The notes under the pieces are model-generated. The model was not told the DNA's origin. It did no database searches and saw only the letters and a program-made list of their open reading frames with translations. A DNA stretch of 57,955 nt, counting the filler, from Platydemus manokwari (taxonomy: Eukaryota), in assembly GCA_037951405.1 (NCBI GenBank). It is 5 parts of 5 records of this genome, joined end to end, with 100 filler letters (N's around TTAATTAATTAA, not from the genome) between each part and the next. Parts side by side here need not be neighbours in the genome. Positions count along the whole stretch, not along the records: positions 32,314 to 44,700 come from JBBMOY010162232.1; 4 more parts are not named here. The stretch is one strand, 5' to 3'. Positions 32,314-44,700 of the stretch are shown here, one piece after another (position 1 is the first letter of the stretch; each line of letters begins with the position of its first letter). The position numbers and the translations under genes were made by a program.

Positions 32314-33049
32314 AAGGTCCTACCAATCTCAATGAATCTAAGAATCTAATGTTTTTATAGTGGAAAGAAATATATTTTTCATCTGTATTTGTTATTATTT
32401 TTTTAATACTATACTGTGAATTTAGTTTCATGATATCATTTAAAAAAAGATGAAAATCATAATTACTTCCGTTATGAGTATAACATGGAATAAAGAAATT
32501 TCTAATAGATTTATGATTTAAATTACAATTATTACAAGAAGCACCTCTATATTTCCCATTATAATGATCATGATTTCTTACTTTTCCTGTTTCTTCTGTA
32601 AAATGAATATCACAATATTGACAAGTTAAAGATTCTGGAAAATTTAATTCATCTTCTTCACTCAATAGTATACTTTTTACATATATTCTTACTGATAAAG
32701 TTTTTTGCTTAAATAAATATTTAGTATTACTCTTACCTAATACTTCGCATTGATCAATGTAATTTTTAAATTTATTTTCAGAATAATATTTATTCAAACG
32801 TCTTAGGCACATAAATTGACTATGTCCATTTTTCGCAAATATGTTCATATTTATACATAGTACATAATGTTTTTCAAACAATAATACATTACAACCTCGA
32901 GGATTTTAATAAAAATAAAATAATGGGAACACATTTTGATCTTTATCAATTTCAAACACATTGAATTCTATATAATTTTGAATTTTAAATTTCTTTATCC
33001 TTTCTAAAGAAATGGGAAATTCTATTGTATTCAAATTTAATTGACCACC
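32314..33049 (-). mobile_element. Polinton/Maverick-type protein-primed DNA polymerase B fragment, truncated by contig end
   Basis: LNLNTIEFPISL..FNVF..(stop)..HYVL; EndoVII-like Zn motif CQYC..VRNHDHYNGKYRGASCNNCNL; exonuclease motif HNGSNYDFHLF; IRFLDS. Confidence 0.88.
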
Positions 33050-33189
33050 ATGCACCATTGAAACCACTGGAATATTATAAAAGAAAAATAACTTTAAGGA
33101 CTATCAACAGAGGAAAATGAGAAAGATGGATACCGAACCAGATAATCACGATTAAAGGCACAAATTTATTCAATCTGTTTGAATCGCAA

Positions 33190-34700
33190 AAACAGAAAAT
33201 TCTATGATCAAACATTGGACAAAGTCAATTAACAGCGAACATATTTTATAGTGAATAAATAACAATATCGAATTGATTAATTTCTCCTGAATACGTTAGG
33301 TGAATAATCCCAATATCGACTGTCGTAATTAAATTTTTGTGCACTGTTTAAATTTTGGCCAACGTTTATATACCCAGATTTTTGTGGGAGCAATTACTAA
33401 TTTTCGGTTAATTTCGTCGTTAATGTGGTAATTTATTTTTTTCCCGTTGTGATTATTTTTCCAAGGTGAATCAGCGCTATCAGTGCTTTCACCATAGCAA
33501 CAAACTAAATCACCATGGTTGCGTGAATTTTAGAAAATTTTAAGGATTGATGATTCATTTGTATGTTTAAAATTATTATGAATTAAACAGTGTGGGTTGA
33601 TAGGCTGTGATATACCTGGACTAATAATCCAGCAAGAATAAGTGTTTTTCTTTTTACAATTCGAACTTACGTAGCCACATTAAAATCGATATTTAATTTT
33701 TAATTTAATGTTAATTTTTGTACTAATAAATCAAATTCTAGCCACTTGTCCTTTCAGCCCGCTTTTGATTTCCAATAAAATAAGTTTTTATGCAATGGGT
33801 ATTTCCAAAAATCTTTTTATGTTCTTTTATAATTCAAGTCTTATTATTTGTTATAATTTAGATAAATACTTATCCAGTCTTATTGCACTTATCGCTCAAT
33901 TATAATTTTTAAAACCAAAATAGACCTTTGGATAATTTGTTACACATAATATAATCCTCAATACTTACTATCGAAAACTCTTAGGACACAAAGTCAGGAA
34001 CCAGAACAAATAATAAAATACATATTTAATAAATGTATTCTAGATTATTTTTTGTTGAACTTTCCTTTATATAATTTTGCTTCGACTAATTTGACTTGTA
34101 TTCAATATCCGTTGAGCTTTCTAACATTTTAATTCGTGTGTTGTCAGCTTATATAGTTGCTGACTTTAGACACTTTGTGCCCATTGATAAAATGTAATTT
34201 TAAAATTTTAATCATTTCGGTACTTTGTATTGCAATTTTAACTTAATGATTTTAACCTTTGACATTTAATAAGTTTGTAAATTGAAATTTAATAATAATA
34301 ATTTTATAGCTTTTTTTAGTTTTTCGGATATTTGGTTTACTAGGTTTATAGATTTAGTATTACTTGAATCAAAACAAATTGAAAATTATGTGAGAAATCA
34401 TGTAAGTATTCAGGCCCTGTTAATAGATAAGTTGAGCTCTGGTTTGCATTTTATTGATAATATTTGATTAGTACACTTGTCTTCAAAAGGTGTATGTATA
34501 TTATTAATTGGATGTGTAACTATTTTATAAATCTGGAATAAAATAAATAAAATTGATTTATCTAAAGTATAATTATTATTACAATGGGAACAATTTAAGC
34601 AAATGATCCGGTTTGGGTTTTTTTTATTACCAGTTTAATGTAGGTATAACTCTATTGATTTTATATAACTCTTGGTCTAATGGTGCCGTAACGACTGATA
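33190..34700 (-). mobile_element. Highly degraded LINE 5' region (possible ORF1 Cys motifs plus AP endonuclease)
   Basis: Ordered remnants resembling Y.P, GDLV (GDFN) and FDHR (SDH) motifs; upstream ICLNCSH; many stops and frameshifts. Confidence 0.3.
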
Positions 34701-35121
34701 TAATATCCTTCCATTGTTTTAAGATTTTAGTCCTTAGATATATTCTAGTTCAATTAGATTAAAGCTAGAATGTTTTAGTGATGTAGCTTTAAATTTATAC
34801 ACAATATAAATTTTAAGAAATAATTTAAACTAATAAAATTAAAATTGTAATAGTTAATTTAATTTAGTCGATACGTTTCGATACTGGAACATTTGTATGC
34901 TAAGTACAATCTTTAATTTAGAATATATTTGCATTTTAGAATAATTCTTCTGTTGTTTATAGCTCTCGTTTTAGGTTGGTGGTTTAATATTTATATTTCC
35001 TGTCACTTGTCTTGAATAATAATATTTCCGTCGTAGGATAACTAGTTGACGATAGTAATTATTATGTCAAGAGTTCAGTTACAGCCTAATGGCAATGTTT
35101 TATGATTTTGATGTTTATTTA

Positions 35122-35379
35122 TGTTGGGTTCGCTTTACGCTAGACGTAACAAAGGTTCGTAACTTTCTTTAATAATTTCCTATCTGACTCCAAAAGATAG
35201 TCGTCACTTCACTAAGTTATATTCATATCAAAATGTACAAAGCAGTTTAACACGGGCTTAACTCTTAATAAAGTTCTCACAATGCTGAGATACTGGCCGA
35301 GGAGCTACTCCTGGCCTAAATTACGTACTCGCGAACGTAGTTAAATTACGGGCGCTCTACACTAATACCTACTGTTACA
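35122..35379 (-). mobile_element. Candidate LTR (TG...CA bounded) at the 3' side of the minus-strand retroelement remnant
   Basis: TGTTGGG at 35122 and TGTTACA ending at 35379; GC-richer, non-coding, hairpin-rich; no polypurine tract or second copy seen. Confidence 0.3.
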
Positions 35380-37499
35380 ATACTGATATTCGAAGTTCAC
35401 TACCCCGAATATCCTAATACAATGATTTTCTACTTTACTCTGCGATAATAATATTCGGAATTCACTATCCACGAATATTCTAATAAATACAATGCAATAA
35501 AATATCAAACAATAACCTGATTTCTGGTTTCAATATTCCAATGATTACTTTATTCCAATAGTTTCTCGGAAATTCTCCTACTATTTCGATGTCCTCCTTG
35601 CAAAATATTCTAATATCTAATAGCTTCTTTTCAAAAAAATTCTTTGCTGACGATTTCTTTTCCTACCTTTTTGCAATTGAGTTGTTCAACGCAAGTCAGC
35701 ATTTATATGCTACAATTGTGCTTGCACCACTTGCAGCACATTTCTCTTTCCCTGAGTTGACATGTGCAGTCAACCCCTACATTTAGATTAATATCAACAG
35801 ATATTAATCGATATTTTCCTTTCTGGAAAATTGTCTGCTATTTCATTATTTTAACAACACTAAAACAAATATATAATTTTCTAAAAATAATTTTAAATTC
35901 TTTATTTATTCAAATCTTTATTTAATAATTATTTTTCTTACTAATAATTTAACATTAACATTATTTTTCTACTTTATTATTTATTTTAATAAATTTATTT
36001 TCTTTATCTTTTAATTTAACTTTGCTCATTAACTATTTACTTTCATTTTAATTTTAATACTTTTACATTATAGACTCCTTATTCGCCTTATTCAAAACGA
36101 TAAAATAAATAACAAAATACATTTATTAATTCACCATCAAAATCATAATCAAAATCACAATCAGAATTATAATTCAATGTCGTTTTGCTATCAATTCAGC
36201 CGTCATATCTTCTTCCTTTTAATACGGCGTTCCTCTCCGGTACTGTTTCAGAAATAGGCTAAATAGCCTAACCGAAATATCTGTTTCTAATCGCTATCTT
36301 TCTGAGGTCCTCACTGGATCCTTCGATTTTCACTGTTGCATATGGAATAACTATCGTTTTCCAACCCCTCTTCAACTTCAATTGCTGTGAGAACATTGTC
36401 TATCTTGACCTCTTTTTGATCTTCTATCAATCCTTTTACATTCTTCGGTTTTATCGCGCTTTCTCCTTGAGGCAATGATTGACATTCATGAAGGCTTCTA
36501 TTCGGTCATAAAAGATTCGGGGTTTAACTGTCTTCTTTACTGACATTCCTTTTCTTTTCGAAATTGCTTCTATCTGGGTTAGGGTTTTCTTGTGAATTCT
36601 AGGTAATCCTGCTACTGGTGTGGGTTTATTGCTCATTCTAAAATATAAATAATTATTAATATCGATTGATACTCTTTTTGCAAAAGAAACCAAACAATTT
36701 ACTTTATATAGTAGATACACTATGTGCTATATTTCTAACATTGAGTACCATGGGTTCTTCTTGTTCTGTTTGTATCTGGATGCTAATTTTTGGTAGCTGA
36801 CTAACATTCTTGTTGCTAACGTTAATTTTACTATCCGCATTACAATGGTTGTCATTGCAAATCCTATTATCATCGATTGTTCTACAGATCTTAAAGATCT
36901 CTTGTCCTGTTTTGATTCGTTTTGACTTCCTGGTCCGGTACCCATTCTCTTCAAATGAGTAAGGGAATCTGAAAAACCGACTCCATAATCACTTTATTCC
37001 CTATTTTCCTTTGGTTTCTTTGATAAATCATGGCTTTTATCCCTCTCCTGAATGACTGCCAGTCTCTGGTTGTCGTAGGTTTCATTGTCGCAGTCGTAGG
37101 TAATGGCGGCGGTATTTTCTGAATGGGTTTGAAGTTAAATCCCGGAATTATTATTTATACTTCTTCATATTCTTCTACCAAAAATTTTGACAACTCCTTA
37201 CTCCACCAATTATACCATATGTAAGCTTGTCTTGGCTTTGTCCAGTGTCATATCATGCCTTGTGTGCTTTTCGTCCAGCACTATCACCATTCATTCCATT
37301 TGAATTTGTGCTGTATAATTACTTTTCGGATTTCACATCCAGGTTATATTATCCTTTGTCACAAATATTCTCACCGGTGCTCGTTTACACCGTGTTTTTC
37401 ATATCTTTGTTTTGTCTTCCGCGTACGTTGATCTTTATGTGACACTTCTATTTCAAACCAGTAGACGCGTGGCAATCTTAGGCTAGTATATGTAACTTT

Positions 37500-37672
37500 T
37501 TGTTTATATCTTCCAAAATAGACTTTCGCTTTGGCAAGGTATTCAATTTCACTACGTGGAATAATTTACAGATCCCCGCAATTATATTGCTCATGAAATC
37601 CTTTCCTCTATCTGTCAACATCTTAATTGGTGCTCCATACCGGAACACTAACTCTTCCACGAATATTTAGCT
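37500..37672 (-). pseudogene. Ty3/Gypsy integrase catalytic-core fragment
   Basis: FVEELVFRYGAPIKMLTDRGKDFMSNIIAGICKLFHVVKLNT matches the rve segment around the second catalytic Asp (I..R.G.P..L.TD.G..F.S). Confidence 0.88.
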
Positions 37673-37679
37673 GAGCTTA

Positions 37680-38296
37680 TATAAGCTAAGTGACATTCCA
37701 TTGGCCGTACCTCATATACTAAAGTTGCTTGTCTGTTGAAACAGTTTGGAAATGATAACATCGCTCCTGATTCCTCATCGAAAACTTCTTTAACTTCTAT
37801 TAACTCGGTTTCATAATCATAAATAGTAACTGTGTTATTGACATAATATTTCCCTCTATTGACCGTTAGTCCAGTACATAGACCATCACCGTAAATTTCT
37901 CCTCCTTCAATTAGGATTTATGTACTTATTACACCTTTTTCTACTGTGAGAGTTGTTTTCTCATCAATTCTTAACTTCTTTGTGGTAAAGGCAAAGTTAC
38001 AAGCTGTTGGAGGAACTTCTATGGCTCTGGGTATCACTTTGGCAGAGACTATTGATGCATGACTGTGATATCCACAATACTATTCTAAATTAGCTTTCTT
38101 TACTCTGCATTCTAATTCTATAGCCAGTTTCTTTATGTAACAGGTATATCAATTTTGTCGTGTTTACCTCCAAATCCACTCTCGAATATATATTTTGTAG
38201 CTGAGGTTTGTGGCAATCAAATGCTCGTATGGTCGTGATTCCTGTCCTATTAAATAAACTCATTACCATGATTATTATTAACAATATCATAGACAT
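37680..38296 (-). pseudogene. Chuvirus/gB-type class III fusion glycoprotein (env), N-terminal part, disrupted
   Basis: Signal-like MSMILLIIIMVMSL, then RAFDC; after a frameshift near 38120: LECRVKKANLE*YCGYHSH..PPTACNFAF..GEIYGDGLCTG..NNTVTIYDYETEL..FDEESG..PNC. Confidence 0.8.
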
Positions 38297-39429
38297 CTGT
38301 GCTCTCAATTCTATGTTTGGTGCTTCTCTTATTTTAGATGGTTTGGGTTTGCCCTTTTCTTTGATCAGTCCTTGACTCGATATATTTTTCCAACAACGTG
38401 CCAATTTTTCCTAGAGTTTCTTGGTATTTCTATTGATGCTTTGTAGTTACTTCATATAGCTTTCGTATCATGACGGCTATAGCTATTTGAGGTTTCCCGC
38501 GTCCCATTATTCCTTGAGCAAAGCTTCTAATAATCACTTCGTCATCCACTTTTTCATCTGATATGATGTGTCAAATTCGAGCTTCTACACTAACCAATTT
38601 GGTCCTCAGTTTTTTTTATAACTCATTATCCAATAGATCTTGAAAATCTGTTGATGAGGTTAATTCCAGATGTAGAAATTTCAACACGTTCTCTAACATG
38701 TCCTCTGCATGGGCTCTATCAAATTTCGTGCTTCTTTCACTTAAGCTCTCGCTTTAATTTTTCCACTTGTAGTGGCACTTAGCGTATGCCTTGCAATTTG
38801 ATCTTTTCTTAGTTTCCCTGGTCCTGGATGTCTTGTCTCGATTCTTCTATCCTTCTTTGGTTAGGTGATTGGCTCAGTGAATTCCGATGGTTTTCTGACA
38901 GGTGGAATTAATTGTTCATAATCTCCTTCTCCATATGATTGGACGAATTCGTCTTGAGTTTCTTCTAATTTTGTTTCTTCTTGCATTTAAACTTCTTCTG
39001 GTTCTGTCTCTTCTTTGCTTTAAATCCTTCTTAATTTTATTCATTTTCTCTCCTTTTTCTGATACAATACAAGTTTCTCTAATTAGCTCATTTTGCTCTT
39101 CAGATAGATTATCTGGTTCATCTGATGGCTCATCTTTCCATTCACTTCGAATCATGTCAATATAACTCGTTTTGTGACATCCTATGAGAAGAATATGATA
39201 TAAGACAAAAAAAGACACAACATAAATACATTATCGCAAATGTATGGTATCACATTGAATGGAATGGTCAATGATAATAGATTATAGGTATTATAGATTA
39301 TAGACAAAATAGTAATGATAAGGTTAAATTGGTTAAAAAATCAAAATGATACAAGTGAAAAGGAAAAATTTAAAATCATAATGCAAATATCATAATCCAA
39401 ATTTCTAAGTCCAAATACAGCAACAATAG

Positions 39430-42400
39430 TTGAAAAGGCACTTCAAAATAGGGAAAATAGAAAAACGACGAAGTAAGGAAAATTATGCAATGGAAAAAAC
39501 ATTTGTTTCGTTATGTTCAAGGTTAAAAATGGAGGATAAATTAATAAATGAAGGAATGATGAAAATGAATGCCGATAGATGGGCAGCTGAAGTTCTATCA
39601 TGGATGTTCATAAATTAATATCAAGGATACCCAGCAAAGTGGGATAGCAGATATTGCTTGATAGGACAAACATACATGATAAGGAACAAATTAAGAAAAA
39701 TGCAAGTAAAAATCTATAAATTGGACAAATTAATAAAAGAAAATGAGCAAGGAAAGAACTTTGAACTATGGAAAAATGAGTCGCGCAACATACTCATGGA
39801 AAAAGAAATATTTAAGCCTGAGATAATAATGAATAAATTTGAAGAGAAAATGTGAAAATTTTAGTTTATAATATACGATAATATGGGAAAAAGAATAGTA
39901 AAGGAGGAAATATTTCCACTGGCAACATCAATTCAATTATAAAAAGAGCTAATAATATTAGATTGGTCCGAGGTATTAAATAAGAAGGGGGAAAAGATAA
40001 AATAATGAAAGGAAGTAAAAGAATGTTAGGATGGAAATGCTTAGGGGATTATTTTGATGATAAAAACAATGAACCAATAAAAATAAGGGATATGCCAAAC
40101 ATGGTAAAAACAGAAGAACAATTTGTAAAAGCATTGCATCCACAAGCAACCATAAAAGGTGGAATGACAAACATATCAAACACACCAGAATTAACCTGAA
40201 ATGATAAGATTCAGGAAAGGGAATTAAGCAATTAAACATGATAAGAAGAGATGGAAGAGAAAAGACTGTCAACTATCGATAGTAGCAACAACAATAGGAT
40301 TAGAATGGAGTAGGAAAAGAATGGCAGATGAAGAAAAAACTAAAATAGAAATTAAAATAATAGGCAAATATTGAGAAGAAATTAAAAAGTAAGTTAGGAT
40401 AAGTACAAACGCATCAATAGAGATACTAAGTAGTGAAATAAATAGAATCTGGCCATATGGCATAGATGAAAGGAAGTATAGTGAAAACAAGGCAGGAATG
40501 TTAGCAGGAAAAATACATAACAACATAGAAATAGAGACAATAGGAAAGACATTAAAATTAATGACAGATGGAGTATTCATGTATAAAGAACATCTAGGTT
40601 TCTATCTGATAGATAAGGGTAAATAGAATAGATTTACGACTATAATGAGGCCATAAGGATTTATAACAAGAAAAAGAAATAGGGGAAAATATATTAGTGA
40701 ATGGACAAGAGAACCAGTAAAACTACAAGAAAATCCAGTTTATGAGTTAGAAATAACAATAGGAAAGGAAATACATGACATGGAGAAAAAGATAAGGTAT
40801 AGAATTAGTGAGAGTACGCCAAAACAATGGTTTAGAAAAAGGGTAAGCAAACAACCACCGGATAAATATGTAGAAAGATGGAAGAAAGAAACACCCAAAG
40901 AATTGAAAATAAAATATAGCTTAAGAAGAGAAATCAAGTGAGAAAAATGGGAAATTTTGGATAACGAAATGCAATTCTAGTTATATTTATTAAGAGAAAG
41001 AGACAAAAATGAAATAGTAATAACACCATTAAAAGAGGAATTAACACACTACATGGTAAAGATAGATAGAGAACCCAATAATTGCCCCGATATGGTTAAG
41101 ACAAACGAATTAATATTCAAACATTGGACAATAAAGAAAGTAAGAGGCATTACAAGAACAATATGTAGACCAAACAGAATAGAATAATGTAAAGATAATA
41201 ATCTATCATAATCAAGAACAAATAGCGGTAAGGTTAAATTAAGGCATATATTCAAAGATGATGAAATAAAGTCAATAGAAATAAAGTTCGAGTCAGAAAA
41301 ACTTAATTACAGAACATAATCAATTCTTTGGGATCAATATGAAATAAATATGATAACTTGTGAAGGGGAATTTAAGCAATAAAATAGAATAGAAACAGAA
41401 GTTAAAATAATAGATGGGATAGGCACTAAGTTAATCGAAATAGTGAAAGTAAAAGAAACAGCAACAGTAGAATACCTAAAATATGAAATAGATATAATCT
41501 AGCAATTCAGAAGAGAGGGAACTAGGAAAATGACATATAGTATAAACGTGTGAATGTTAATAAGGAAAAAGGAAACATTACTGGGAGTAACATTAGAATT
41601 AATAACAAAGGGTATATTTATAGATAATGTCTAACTACTGGAATATTACCAAATAAGTGCGAATAAGGAAAATAAATTAATAGCAGTCATGAGAACATGG
41701 GATGAAAGAATAACGGGTATGGAAGATAAGTTACCAATTACGTTACCAATATGGTTACTGGAAGCATTGGTATATCACTTAAAAGTGAAAATAAGAGGAA
41801 GAAAAGAAGAGAAAAAAAAGGTGCAAATGCGTGAATTAAGTGGTTTTAAGAAATGGATAAGAAATCAAACAAAAATACCCTAAGAAAAATAAATAGTGAG
41901 ATGATAAAGTATACCAATAAAATAGAACATAAATATGAACATAAGGGAAAGAAAGAAGAAATCTGGAGGATACTGGATGATGATTACCAGTTTCGACATT
42001 GTCATTTATAAGAAATAGGATGGAATAATATAAAAGATAATGAAAGAAGACAATTTAAAAGATTTTTTCATGGAATATGAAATAAACAAAGTAACAATAA
42101 ATATAATATCAAATAGTCCAACTACTTTACGACCATGACTATGAAATAGAAAAGGAATTGGAAGGAGTTTGGATAATAATGGATAACGAAAAGGATCTTT
42201 GGCAATATTCATTGAATGAAGAACAACCAAATGAAATAATTATTAGTCCAATATGCGAGGAAACAAAATTCATAGTTAATTTTGAAATGGAAAAGAGCGC
42301 ATGTTCATGTAAAACAACTGAATATAAGATGATTCCAAAAGAGGCACAAGTTAAACATTTCAAAAAAATAATCATATGGCAAGCAACAAATAGAGTTGAA

Positions 42401-42520
42401 TGAGATACATCAAATATGATCATTTACCAAAATAAGAAAAGGAAAGTCGGTTGGGAAAAATTAAATGACATCTTGAAAGACGATGAAATAAATACAATAG
42501 AAGTAATAGTGATTACCAAA
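39430..42520 (+). pseudogene. Decayed polyprotein of tandem ubiquitin-like (beta-grasp) domains in three ~1.2-kb super-repeats (element B)
   Basis: Mostly one frame with scattered stops. 40747-40926 aligns without gaps to ubiquitin L15-R74; paralogous units 40342-40650 vs 41395-41694; KDDEI at 41254 and 42476; W.I.DNE..Y.L.E..NEI.I.P..EE at 40948 and 42170. Confidence 0.7.
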
Positions 42521-43451
42521 ATATTTGAAAGATATGCGGAGTCAAAAAAGATAAGAATGGTAAAATGTAGAAGAAAAACCAAAGAGAGAAAAATTGACAG
42601 ACAATGGTCAGTCGACCTGGATGAAATAGTAGATGAAGAAATAAGTGGAGATAATAAAAGTAATGATGATAAGAAAGAAACGTCAAAGAAGAAAAAGAAG
42701 AAAAAGTAGGTTAAAAACACAGAAGTCACTGAAACATCAGGAAAAGACTTCATGAAACGTATAAAGAGAATAAGCAAATAAGGAAACAACAGAATGAATT
42801 AGGGAATTGTATGGGATGTTTACAAGGACAGTATCACGATCCATTTTTCGGATGTCAAAATAACAACAAACTAAAGCACATAGAAATTAAAAAAGTAGTG
42901 TACTCATATCGAAAGGAAATAAATCTGATCACACCTGAATCACAAAATAACGAGGAAGAAGAAAAGAAGTTAGATGAAGAAATAATATATGGCGAAGAAC
43001 ATATACATCAACAACCGATTTTCCTACCTGAATACCAACCGAAAGATAATTATGGATACATACCACAAGTTCCATATGATATTTACGGAAAGGAAAAAAT
43101 TAAACAGTATCTACAAGCATTTGGTGGCGAACCCAGTGTTTTATATAAAAATGAAAAATTGCAAATAAAGACATTAGAGCATTGTATAAGTAATTATTGA
43201 GAAGAAATAAACTGAATAAGCAATAAAATACCTGATAAAAAACCGCTAAGGACGTAATTAATATAATAAATGAGAAGAAAACACTAGAATGGATAATTAC
43301 GACTTTGCAAACAACAACTATTTTAATGAATAATAAAATAATAGATAGAGAAGAAGGAGCGGCATTAATATCAAATGGATATGACAGCGAAATTAACCAA
43401 CATCAAGAATGGCCTAAATTAATTCAAACAATGTTAGAAAAATGACTGAAA

Positions 43452-44135
43452 ATGAAAAAACAAGACGAATCATTAGAGAAACACCATAAGCAAAAATCCA
43501 AATTTGCCACCATATTTCAAACGTTAATAACAATGTATCTAGTAGGAATAATAGAAGGAGGTGATGCGAGAATTAATGGATATGATTGTGGAAAAGATTC
43601 ATTACTAGACATTGATAAATGCCCAGATATTGATTTAACAAAATCAATAGCTAAGGAAATGTATGTATACTATGAATCCAAATTTCTGTTCGACAAAGCT
43701 AAAGAGTGTAAAATAATGTATCAGGAGTTAACATTTCACTGCTCATGGTCATCAGAAGCATATACAACAGTATGAGAACTGGAATGGGCACCAATGGCGG
43801 AGATACCTACAAAGGAAAAATGTAAGCAAGCATTTGAGAATGGAACATATTACTCATCACAAGGACATGCAAAAACATTAGGGAAATGTATAATAAGACA
43901 AACAATAGGACCGGAGGGATGGAGAGGTTCAGGAAGTTATTGTAAAGGTTCAGAATACCAAGTGTGGAATAAGACATTAGAAAATGTAGTAGCACTTAAA
44001 CATTACATCATAGAATTAAAGGAAAGTCAAGCTACATTTGATGCTTAGACAAAAAAAATTAAAACATGGATAAATTGTGAATACGAGAAAGAAATTTGTG
44101 GCACAGGTACTCTGTCAAACATATTCATCACTTGG
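43452..44135 (+). pseudogene. Chuvirus/gB-type class III fusion glycoprotein (env), N-terminal part, two in-frame stops, 3' truncated
   Basis: Hydrophobic leader IFQTLITMYLVGIIEG, then INGYDC..SLLDIDKCP..ECKI..FHC..KCKQAF..GSYCKG..ENVV..HYIIEL..NCEYEKEIC..ITW; Cys spacing parallels 37680-38296. Confidence 0.85.
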
Positions 44136-44139
44136 AAAT

Positions 44140-44562
44140 GTATTGATGATGATTATTTGAAAATTTCTAATCATGAGTTTTCGAGTTAATCAAAAATAGA
44201 ATCGAATAGAATAGAAAAATAGAATAGTTGTATGTTTGACACTTGAAACCCAGGAATTGCTTTCTCTTGTTGTAAGAATTACTTTTGCATTGGGATAAAT
44301 GTTCCTGAAATCTTTGTAAAATGAAACTAAAGGCTCACCTATTGGAAAACAATATCTTTGAAACAATCGATCACACGTTTCTCTATCGATAAATCCACAA
44401 TTGAAATTGTTAATCCACGTCTGACAGTGATCTAGGCAATGATCTATGTATATAACACCTCTGGCCATAGAATCCTCCCAGAGCAAGCTTAAGTGACATA
44501 TTTCCAGTTCTCATACTTCCAGTACTAATGACGAATAAATCGTTTGTTTTTTTATTATTCAT
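44140..44562 (-). pseudogene. Sulfotransferase pseudogene (Sulfotransfer_4 / schistosome SULT-OR-like family), frameshifted and 3' truncated
   Basis: ATG 44562: MNNKKTNDLFVISTGSMRTGNMSLKLALGGFYGQRCY (family motif VIGAG..RTGT.SLK.AL...CYH); frameshift near 44450; then W..DRLFQRY..P..FYKDF..YPNAKVILTTRESNSWVSSV. Confidence 0.85.
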
Positions 44563-44700
44563 TTACAGGAAGCAACGCAAATAATTGTGAATGATTTCAG
44601 GTGCACATAGACATTCTAAAATGTATAAGAGCTAACTAACTAAATGTCTCTCACTCAATTATATAAATACAACATTTCAACAGACAATTTGAAATGACAC

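What the first reader, a model, noticed from the sequence alone, without database searches (positions are those of the whole stretch)
39820..42520. Hidden ~1.2-kb (~400-codon) protein-level super-repeat made of distinct Ubl subtypes
Seen only in translation, not obvious as a DNA repeat. KRMLGWKCLGDYFDD (40017), SGKVKLRHIFKDDEIKSIE (41224) and KRKVGWEKLNDILKDDEINTIE (42437) are spaced ~1200 and 1222 nt. WEILDNE..YLL..NEIVITPLKEE (40948) and WIIMDNEKDLWQYSL..NEIIISPICEE (42170) are 1222 nt apart. EIKII..ASIEIL..EI..GKTLKL.T.G.F..L.FY.I..N..MR (40342-40650) matches EVKII..ATVEYL..EI..GVTLEL.T.G.F..LEYYQI..N..MR (41395-41694), both with a ~25-aa insertion after the helix. 40747-40926 aligns ungapped to ubiquitin L15-R74 (L,E,I,K,I,Q,L,L,R identical). 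Inference: roughly 8-10 Ubl domains arose by ancient block duplication and diverged under coding constraint. Most lack a C-terminal GG, so they are probably not conjugated.
Basis: partly seen in the sequence, partly recalled or inferred. Interest (0 to 1): 0.8.

Follow-up and report, generated by a model that had tools for sequence, protein, structure and literature searches.

The report
Duplicated block in dead virus-like gene
A block of about 1.1 kb really is duplicated, visibly only in translation, inside a stop-riddled orphan reading frame next to a viral-glycoprotein-like fragment; nothing I could test shows that its units are ubiquitin-like, so it is a fairly ordinary decayed mobile or viral remnant.

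Summary
The repeat is real but smaller than claimed. Two segment pairs are significantly similar at protein level. B1 40936-41298 matches B2 42158-42520 at offset 1222 (34% identity, blastp E 8e-9, z 18). C1 40339-40662 matches C2 41392-41706 at offset 1050 (z 13). They are colinear, giving a C-D-B block present twice. A third copy of the C-terminal motif (40002-40085) and a partial extra B start (41952-42032) are only marginal.

The Ubl reading found no support. None of 20 stop-free pieces hits a ubiquitin-clan Pfam family, and PDB sequence searches find no Ubl. B, C and D profiles are unrelated to each other. The piece said to align to ubiquitin is modelled, at low confidence, as a hairpin plus four helices. 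Complete units could not be folded because every one is broken by stops.

The B profile has no relative among 1.84 billion proteins.

The reading path carries 22 in-frame stops and at least 6 frame changes in 1560 codons. Downstream lie a 129-codon ORF and the N-terminal ~245 codons of a glycoprotein weakly matching Pfam Monjiviricetes_fusion. A second, diverged copy of that glycoprotein lies on the other strand.

Best reading: a dead virus-like or mobile-element gene cluster in an AT-rich eukaryote, with an old duplication inside an orphan gene.

The parts
39430..40002 (+). Leading part of the decayed orphan reading frame (frame 1); 4 in-frame stops
   Evidence: No Pfam family above threshold.
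39984..40196 (+). Frame-0 stretch holding motif A0 (40002-40085), a possible tail of an earlier B unit
   Evidence: SW against B2 p about 7e-4, no similarity to B1; B-HMM i-E 0.79 at colinear model positions. Marginal.
40339..40662 (+). Unit C1 (frame 1), about 105 codons, 4 stops
   Evidence: C1 against C2: SW 95, z 13, Gumbel p 3e-8; window scan score 90.
40657..40938 (+). Unit D1, 94 stop-free codons; contains the stretch said to align to ubiquitin
   Evidence: No Pfam hit. Best PDB hit SbcD, E 0.01, no Ubl. AlphaFold: hairpin plus four helices, pLDDT 69, pTM 0.26. D1 against D2 p 0.03.
40936..41298 (+). Unit B1 (frame 1), about 115 codons, 4 stops; ends with motif A1
   Evidence: blastp E 7.9e-9 against B2; SW 134, z 18.
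41392..41706 (+). Unit C2 (frame 1), 3 stops
41695..42157 (+). Unit D2 with a frame change; includes a partial extra B start at 41952-42032 (frame 0)
   Evidence: p 0.003-0.0045 against both B starts; i-E 0.077. Explains the offsets 1050 and 1222.
42158..42520 (+). Unit B2 (frame 2), 1 stop at 42401 aligned with the B1 stop at 41185; ends with motif A2
   Evidence: The B profile has 0 relatives in 1.84 billion proteins.
42521..42709 (+). Lysine-rich tail of the orphan frame, ending at TAG 42707
42811..43200 (+). Stop-free 129-codon ORF whose product begins Met-Gly-Cys; no known family
   Evidence: Not significantly similar to C units.
43452..44186 (+). N-terminal ~245 codons of a viral-fusion-glycoprotein-like gene (G+): hydrophobic leader, conserved cysteines, 2 stops; cut at an (AATAG)n microsatellite
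   Evidence: Pfam PF24664 Monjiviricetes_fusion, E 2.7e-4, 19.5 bits, below the 27-bit cut-off. Colinear with the minus-strand copy, z 9.4. Microsatellite.
37651..38410 (-). Second, diverged glycoprotein-like fragment (G-), head to head with the plus-strand cluster
   Evidence: Pfam PF24664, E 5.5e-6, 25.1 bits, just below cut-off; alignment with G+.

Best explanation
Window 39430-44186 (+) is a dead remnant of a virus-like or mobile-element gene cluster in an AT-rich eukaryotic genome. It has three parts: a long orphan reading frame (about 39430-42706), a 129-codon ORF (42811-43200), and the N-terminal third of a viral fusion-glycoprotein-like gene (43452-44186). While the orphan gene was still coding, a block of about 350-400 codons was duplicated in tandem. 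The block has three unrelated segments: C (about 105 aa), D (about 95-150 aa) and B (about 115 aa). Whether this made an internal repeat of one protein or two adjacent paralogous genes cannot be decided. The copies then diverged under protein-level constraint to about 34% identity. Later the whole cluster was inactivated and picked up nonsense mutations, several of them from tryptophan codons, and frame shifts. Shown: the repeat, the decay, and the codon-position asymmetry. Inferred: the viral or mobile origin, the order of events, and the original function of the C-D-B protein, which is unknown. The locus makes no protein today, and the ubiquitin-like label is not supported.
For: Repeat. Decay: 22 in-frame stops of all three kinds and at least 6 frame changes over 1560 codons of the best path. 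Within 40228-41880 there are 13 stops in 551 codons, against 62-85 in the off frames. Stops align to TGG twice, to another stop once, and otherwise to unrelated sense codons, so they carry no consistent coding meaning. Constraint after duplication: identity by codon position 0.58, 0.61, 0.49, with 34-35% amino-acid identity at about 56% nucleotide identity. Context: two independent weak hits to the same part of Pfam Monjiviricetes_fusion, on fragments that align colinearly with each other. An Endonuclease_7-domain ORF above the Pfam cut-off lies at 32315-32905 (-), and a Sulfotransfer_4 exon at 44193-44510 (-). The plus strand is 44-49% A, and the skew flips at about 39300. Precedents: Jingchuvirales glycoprotein fragments are common in arthropod genomes and have been captured by retrotransposons (PMC7642597, PMC10084718). 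Nematode Mavericks carry a class III fusogen (bioRxiv 10.1101/2022.07.12.499685).
Against: Both glycoprotein hits are below Pfam's gathering score. No reverse transcriptase, capsid, LTR pair or terminal repeat was found in the piece, so the class of element is not established. No relative of any part of the orphan frame was found anywhere, so viral or mobile origin rests on neighbourhood and base composition only. Across 1653 nt (40228-41880) there are 13 stops but no frame shift. That is fewer shifts than I would expect from neutral decay (my rough estimate is 4 or more).
Confidence: 0.7

Rival explanations
1. One reading: the region encodes, or once encoded, an array of 8-10 ubiquitin-like (beta-grasp) domains of several subtypes, built by block duplication.
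For: The block duplication is real. By eye, C units and the last ~78 residues of B show alternating hydrophobic strands, an amphipathic helix and a terminal pattern reminiscent of ubiquitin's last two strands. This is my reading, not a test.
Against: No ubiquitin-clan Pfam hit on 20 pieces. No Ubl in PDB with three single pieces or with a profile of the A motif. B, C and D are unrelated by hhalign and by Smith-Waterman. D1 is modelled as mostly helical. The B2 N-terminal piece model is uninformative, pLDDT 44. Only two unit types are repeated, twice each.
Confidence: 0.15
2. The repeat is two adjacent paralogous genes, each C-D-B and about 350-400 codons, rather than a repeat within one protein.
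For: A Met codon lies just upstream of C1 (about 40321) and another about 45 nt upstream of C2 (about 41350). Two stops lie in the 93-nt spacer between B1 and C2 (41317, 41380). B2 is followed by a lysine-rich tail and a stop.
Against: B1, the spacer and C2 are all in the same frame. The spacer stops may be decay like the others. No repeated gene-junction signal was seen.
Confidence: 0.3
3. The gene is alive in an organism whose genetic code reads all three stop codons as sense.
For: The frame is kept over 1653 nt despite 13 stops. In-frame stops are 5-6 times rarer than in the off frames.
Against: Stops align to W, G, I, A, H, E, N and to another stop in the paralogue, so there is no consistent meaning. 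There are at least 6 frame changes along the path. The neighbouring Sulfotransfer_4 exon (106 codons) and Endonuclease_7 ORF (197 codons) contain no stops.
Confidence: 0.03
4. The similarity is a composition artefact of K/E/I/N-rich, A-rich sequence.
For: Composition is extreme, 49% A, and many low-complexity chance matches appear in tblastx.
Against: Composition-preserving shuffles never reach the observed scores (0 of 1000; z 13 and 18). Among 14,877 window pairs only these two stand out. blastp with composition-based statistics gives E 7.9e-9.
Confidence: 0.01

Closest known systems
Endogenous glycoprotein fragments of Jingchuvirales/Monjiviricetes in invertebrate genomes, some captured by LTR retrotransposons (PMC7642597, PMC10084718)
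   Same: Decayed glycoprotein-like fragments with weak matches to Pfam Monjiviricetes_fusion. They are embedded among other mobile-element debris, and more than one diverged copy lies in the same neighbourhood.
   Different: Both hits are below the gathering score. No flanking reverse transcriptase or LTR was found. The upstream C-D-B frame has no counterpart in those descriptions as far as I could check.
Nematode Mavericks carrying the class III fusogen MFUS-1 (bioRxiv 10.1101/2022.07.12.499685)
   Same: A virus-like DNA transposon context is conceivable. An Endonuclease_7-domain ORF lies on the minus strand, together with a stretch that looks integrase-like by eye, and there are fusogen-like genes with an N-terminal leader.
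   Different: No capsid, ATPase, protease or terminal inverted repeat was found. The integrase-like stretch has no statistical support. The host is unknown.
Tandem ubiquitin-like proteins (polyubiquitin, ISG15, FAT10)
   Same: Several small domains in a row. By eye, C and the end of B have a strand/helix rhythm compatible with a beta-grasp.
   Different: No sequence match to any ubiquitin-clan model. No terminal GG. The unit types are unrelated to each other. The repeat unit is a ~350-400-codon composite block, not a 76-residue domain.

Membership tests
Ubiquitin-like (Pfam ubiquitin clan, beta-grasp) | Significant match of a unit to a ubiquitin-clan profile or to a solved Ubl sequence | tested here: not met
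   20 stop-free pieces against Pfam at E up to 1 or 10: no clan member. PDB phmmer/hmmsearch at E up to 10: none. Power was limited because only fragments could be submitted.
Ubiquitin-like (Pfam ubiquitin clan, beta-grasp) | Beta-grasp fold (mixed sheet wrapped round one helix) | tested here: inconclusive
   D1 model: hairpin plus four helices, pLDDT 69, pTM 0.26. B2 N-terminal piece: pLDDT 44. Complete C and B units could not be folded because stops split them.
Ubiquitin-like (Pfam ubiquitin clan, beta-grasp) | C-terminal Gly-Gly for conjugation | tested here: not met
   Read directly: the aligned unit ends carry no GG.
Internal protein repeat / tandem block duplication | Significant colinear off-diagonal similarity after composition correction | tested here: met
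   (E 7.9e-9; z 18 and 13); colinear order C-D-B twice.
Monjiviricetes-type viral fusion glycoprotein (Pfam PF24664) | Profile match at or above the gathering score (27 bits) | tested here: not met
   19.5 bits, E 2.7e-4 and 25.1 bits, E 5.5e-6. These are two independent sub-threshold hits to overlapping profile positions 85-186.
Monjiviricetes-type viral fusion glycoprotein (Pfam PF24664) | Signal peptide, large ectodomain with conserved cysteines, C-terminal membrane anchor | tested here: inconclusive
   A hydrophobic leader and aligned cysteines are seen in both copies. Both copies stop after about 245-250 residues, so most of the ectodomain and the anchor are missing.
LTR retrotransposon / endogenous retrovirus | LTR pair, reverse transcriptase, integrase | tested here: not met
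   No long direct repeats in the 12.4-kb piece. No RT or rve hit. The integrase-like stretch 37481-37666 (-) has no significant hit. The piece may be too short to hold both LTRs.

The most novel reading that the evidence does not exclude
The C-D-B frame may be the fossil of an undescribed virus-like element protein, built from several mutually divergent beta-grasp-type domains and encoded upstream of a small Met-Gly-initiated protein and a class III-like fusogen. The family would be new, since the B profile has no relative among 1.84 billion proteins.
Probability: 0.1. Interest if true: 0.5.

Novelty: new member of a known kind. Interest (0 to 1): 0.2.

Why it matters
It matters mainly as a calibration case. 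A repeat invisible to DNA repeat finders was correctly spotted by reading translations, but the domain label attached to it does not hold up. Biologically it adds one more decayed virus-like or mobile remnant. It does have an orphan gene with no detectable relatives and two diverged fusogen-like fragments head to head. If less decayed copies exist in the source genome, they could reveal what the C-D-B protein was.

Tried and rejected
**Searches for relatives that returned nothing**
- Word-index protein searches with B2, the 155-codon piece and C1.
- Full HMMER search of 1.84 billion representatives with the B1/B2 profile: 0 hits.
- Two viral-contig scans and two metagenome scans.
- Exact look-up of the 129-aa ORF.

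**Other tests that gave nothing**
- Rfam and tRNA scans.
- tblastx of the plus-strand cluster against the rest of the piece: only low-complexity noise.
- A third C-type unit at 42881 in the 129-codon ORF, which I suspected by eye, is not significant.
- RIP-type hypermutation: the indices are not RIP-like.
- MAFFT alignment of C2 fragments to C1 (A2) was misaligned, so I did not use it.

- A direct alignment to ubiquitin, because I had no tool-given reference for its sequence.
- Submitting stop-spanning translations with X to the remote tools, because they take no read-through by reference and I did not type long strings.
- Foldseek on the two models, because their confidence is too low for meaningful matches.

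The sequence is not human-like.

Full report
**What the piece is**

The usable piece is 32314-44700. It is AT-rich (GC 23-38%). From about 39300 to 44100 the plus strand is extremely purine-rich: A 44-49%, T 22-25%, G 18-20%, C 9-13%. The skew has the opposite sign to the left of 39300.

No reading frame is open for long. Three-frame translation shows one path with far fewer stops than the other frames. It runs frame 1 39430-40002, frame 0 39984-40196, frame 1 40228-41880, frame 0 41850-42077, frame 2 42107-42706, frame 1 42733-43197, frame 0 43239-44186.

That path has 22 in-frame stops (10 TAA, 7 TGA, 5 TAG) in 1560 codons and at least six frame changes. In 40228-41880 there are 13 stops in 551 codons, against 62 and 85 in the two off frames. 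This is a once-coding, now broken region.

**Checking the observation**

- A three-frame blastp self-comparison, with X at stops and composition-based statistics, gives one strong off-diagonal. 40948-41283 (frame 1) matches 42170-42505 (frame 2) at offset 1222, 34% identity over 114 residues, E 7.9e-9.
- Smith-Waterman with composition-preserving shuffles gives B1/B2 a score of 134 against 30.9 +/- 5.7 (z 18).
- The same test rescues a pair that BLAST lost because of the X's. C1 40339-40662 matches C2 41392-41706 at offset 1050, score 95 against 28.9 +/- 5.1 (z 13).
- Among 14,877 pairs of 100-residue windows across all three frames these two are the only outliers, with scores 102 and 90 against a 99.9th percentile of 65.
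- At DNA level the best direct repeat in the whole piece is a 59-nt, 76% match at spacing 1222. Otherwise the repeat is indeed invisible as DNA.

The two pairs are colinear, so the structure is C1-D1-B1-C2-D2-B2.

- D1 and D2 are only weakly alike (p 0.03).
- D2 is longer because it holds a partial extra copy of the start of B, at 41952-42032 in frame 0 (p 0.003-0.0045 against both B starts; B-HMM i-E 0.077). This explains the two offsets, 1050 and 1222.
- The third copy of the C-terminal motif, at 40002-40085, is marginal. It gives p about 7e-4 against B2, no similarity to B1, and HMM i-E 0.79.
- HMMs built from B1/B2 and C1/C2 find nothing else in six frames of the piece.

**Coding constraint**

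In the aligned codons of both pairs, nucleotide identity is 0.58, 0.61 and 0.49 at positions 1, 2 and 3. Chance expectation is about 0.30-0.37. Amino-acid identity is 34-35%.

This is more than independent nucleotide matches at those rates would give. By my estimate that would be about 23%. The alignment was guided by the protein, which biases this test somewhat.

Only one of the stops inside the aligned units is at a shared position (41185 TAA and 42401 TGA). Two others face TGG in the paralogue, and the rest face unrelated sense codons. So the duplication happened in a working gene and the decay came later. The stops carry no consistent meaning, which argues against a reassigned genetic code.

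**The ubiquitin-like interpretation**

- Twenty pieces covering 39430-42706 were scanned against Pfam at E up to 1 or 10. None hits a ubiquitin-clan family, and nothing reaches a gathering score.
- phmmer against all PDB chains with D1, the B2 piece and the C1 piece finds no Ubl at E up to 10. The same holds for a profile of the three A-motif copies.
- hhalign between the B, C and D alignments and the downstream ORF gives probabilities of 0.9% or less. B's C-terminal part against C is at chance. The supposed subtypes therefore show no sign of common ancestry.
- AlphaFold on D1 models a hairpin followed by four helices. This is the one complete, unbroken piece, and it contains the stretch said to align to ubiquitin L15-R74 (residues 31-90 of the piece). 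The model has pLDDT 69 and pTM 0.26, and the other four models have pLDDT 41-49.
- The B2 N-terminal piece, with B1 as its only alignment partner, gives pLDDT 44 and is uninformative.

By eye, C units and the last ~78 residues of B do have a strand-strand-helix-strand-strand rhythm compatible with a beta-grasp. That is a lead and not a test. Both are split by stops, so I could not fold them whole.

I did not align to ubiquitin directly because I had no tool-given reference for its sequence.

**Relatives**

None were found. The B1/B2 profile has no hit at E up to 0.001 among 1.84 billion representative proteins. Word-index searches with B2, the 155-codon piece and C1 are blank. So are the viral-contig and metagenome scans. 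The 129-residue ORF is not on record.

**Surroundings**

- Downstream of the lysine-rich end of the orphan frame (stop at 42707) lies a stop-free 129-codon ORF, 42811-43200. Its product begins Met-Gly-Cys and matches no family.
- From an ATG at 43452 comes a frame with a hydrophobic leader and many cysteines. Its piece 43776-44045 hits Pfam Monjiviricetes_fusion (viral fusion glycoprotein) at E 2.7e-4, 19.5 bits, profile positions 107-186.
- On the minus strand, 37921-38079 hits the same family at E 5.5e-6, 25.1 bits, positions 85-131.
- The two glycoprotein-like frames align colinearly over about 200 residues with matching cysteines (z 9.4).
- Both hits are below the 27-bit cut-off. Both copies end after about 245-250 residues. 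The plus-strand one ends at an (AATAG)n microsatellite.
- Further out are an ORF with an Endonuclease_7 domain above cut-off (32315-32905, minus strand, cut by the piece's edge) and a Sulfotransfer_4 exon (44193-44510, minus strand, E 4e-13).
- A stretch at 37481-37666 (minus strand) looks integrase-like to me but has no statistical support.
- No LTR pair, tRNA or Rfam family was found.

Published precedents fit such a neighbourhood. Glycoprotein fragments of Jingchuvirales are widespread in arthropod genomes and have been captured by retrotransposons (PMC7642597, PMC10084718). Nematode Mavericks carry a class III fusogen (bioRxiv 10.1101/2022.07.12.499685). I could not determine the host or the class of element. 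The sequence is not human-like.

**Verdict**

The inference of an old duplication under coding constraint is supported.

The ubiquitin-like label and the count of 8-10 domains are not supported by any test available here. A beta-grasp fold for some units cannot be excluded, because only fragments could be tested.

The most likely account is a dead virus-like or mobile-element gene cluster whose orphan upstream gene carried a tandem duplication.

One oddity remains. There are thirteen stops but no frame shift across 1653 nt, fewer shifts than I would expect from neutral decay. A strong mutational drift towards A, and easy loss of TGG, may explain it.

**Handling of the broken genes**

In scripts I read the broken frames only with X at the stops.

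Noticed in passing
window 37651-38410 (-) and 43452-44186 (+): Two diverged fusion-glycoprotein-like fragments lie head to head about 5 kb apart. Each has a hydrophobic leader and a sub-threshold hit to Pfam PF24664, and both end after about 245-250 residues at nearly the same aligned position.
   Followed up: partly
window 32315-32905 (-): A stop-free 197-codon frame, cut by the piece's edge, has an Endonuclease_7 (H-N-H type) domain above the Pfam cut-off (27.6 bits against 23.6). From memory, its C-terminal part resembles the start of protein-primed DNA polymerases of Maverick/Polinton-type elements. That resemblance was not tested.
   Followed up: partly
window 44193-44510 (-): A stop-free 106-codon stretch matches Sulfotransfer_4 (E 4.3e-13). 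It is probably an exon of a host gene, and it abuts the truncated end of the plus-strand cluster.
   Followed up: no
window 37481-37666 (-): A 62-codon stretch looks by eye like the catalytic-core end of a retroviral-type integrase. Pfam finds nothing, and the best related PDB hit is TnsB at E 1.8.
   Followed up: partly
window 40228-41880 (+): There are thirteen in-frame stops but no frame shift over 1653 nt. Two stops face TGG in the paralogous unit, and the stop at 41185 (TAA) faces the stop at 42401 (TGA).
   Followed up: partly
window 39300 (boundary): AT and GC skews change sign sharply at about 39300, as if two A-rich coding units diverge from this point. Short tandem repeats (7, 14 and 16 nt units) sit at 39273-39417.
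   Followed up: no
window 42811-43200 (+): This is the only sizeable ATG-initiated ORF without stops in the cluster (129 codons). Its product starts Met-Gly-Cys, and it has an acidic run and a Tyr/Pro-rich stretch. It has no relatives and no family.
   Followed up: partly
window 35917-36059: A 68-nt unit is repeated 2.2 times (76% matches) in a very AT-rich stretch between the mobile-element fragments.
   Followed up: no
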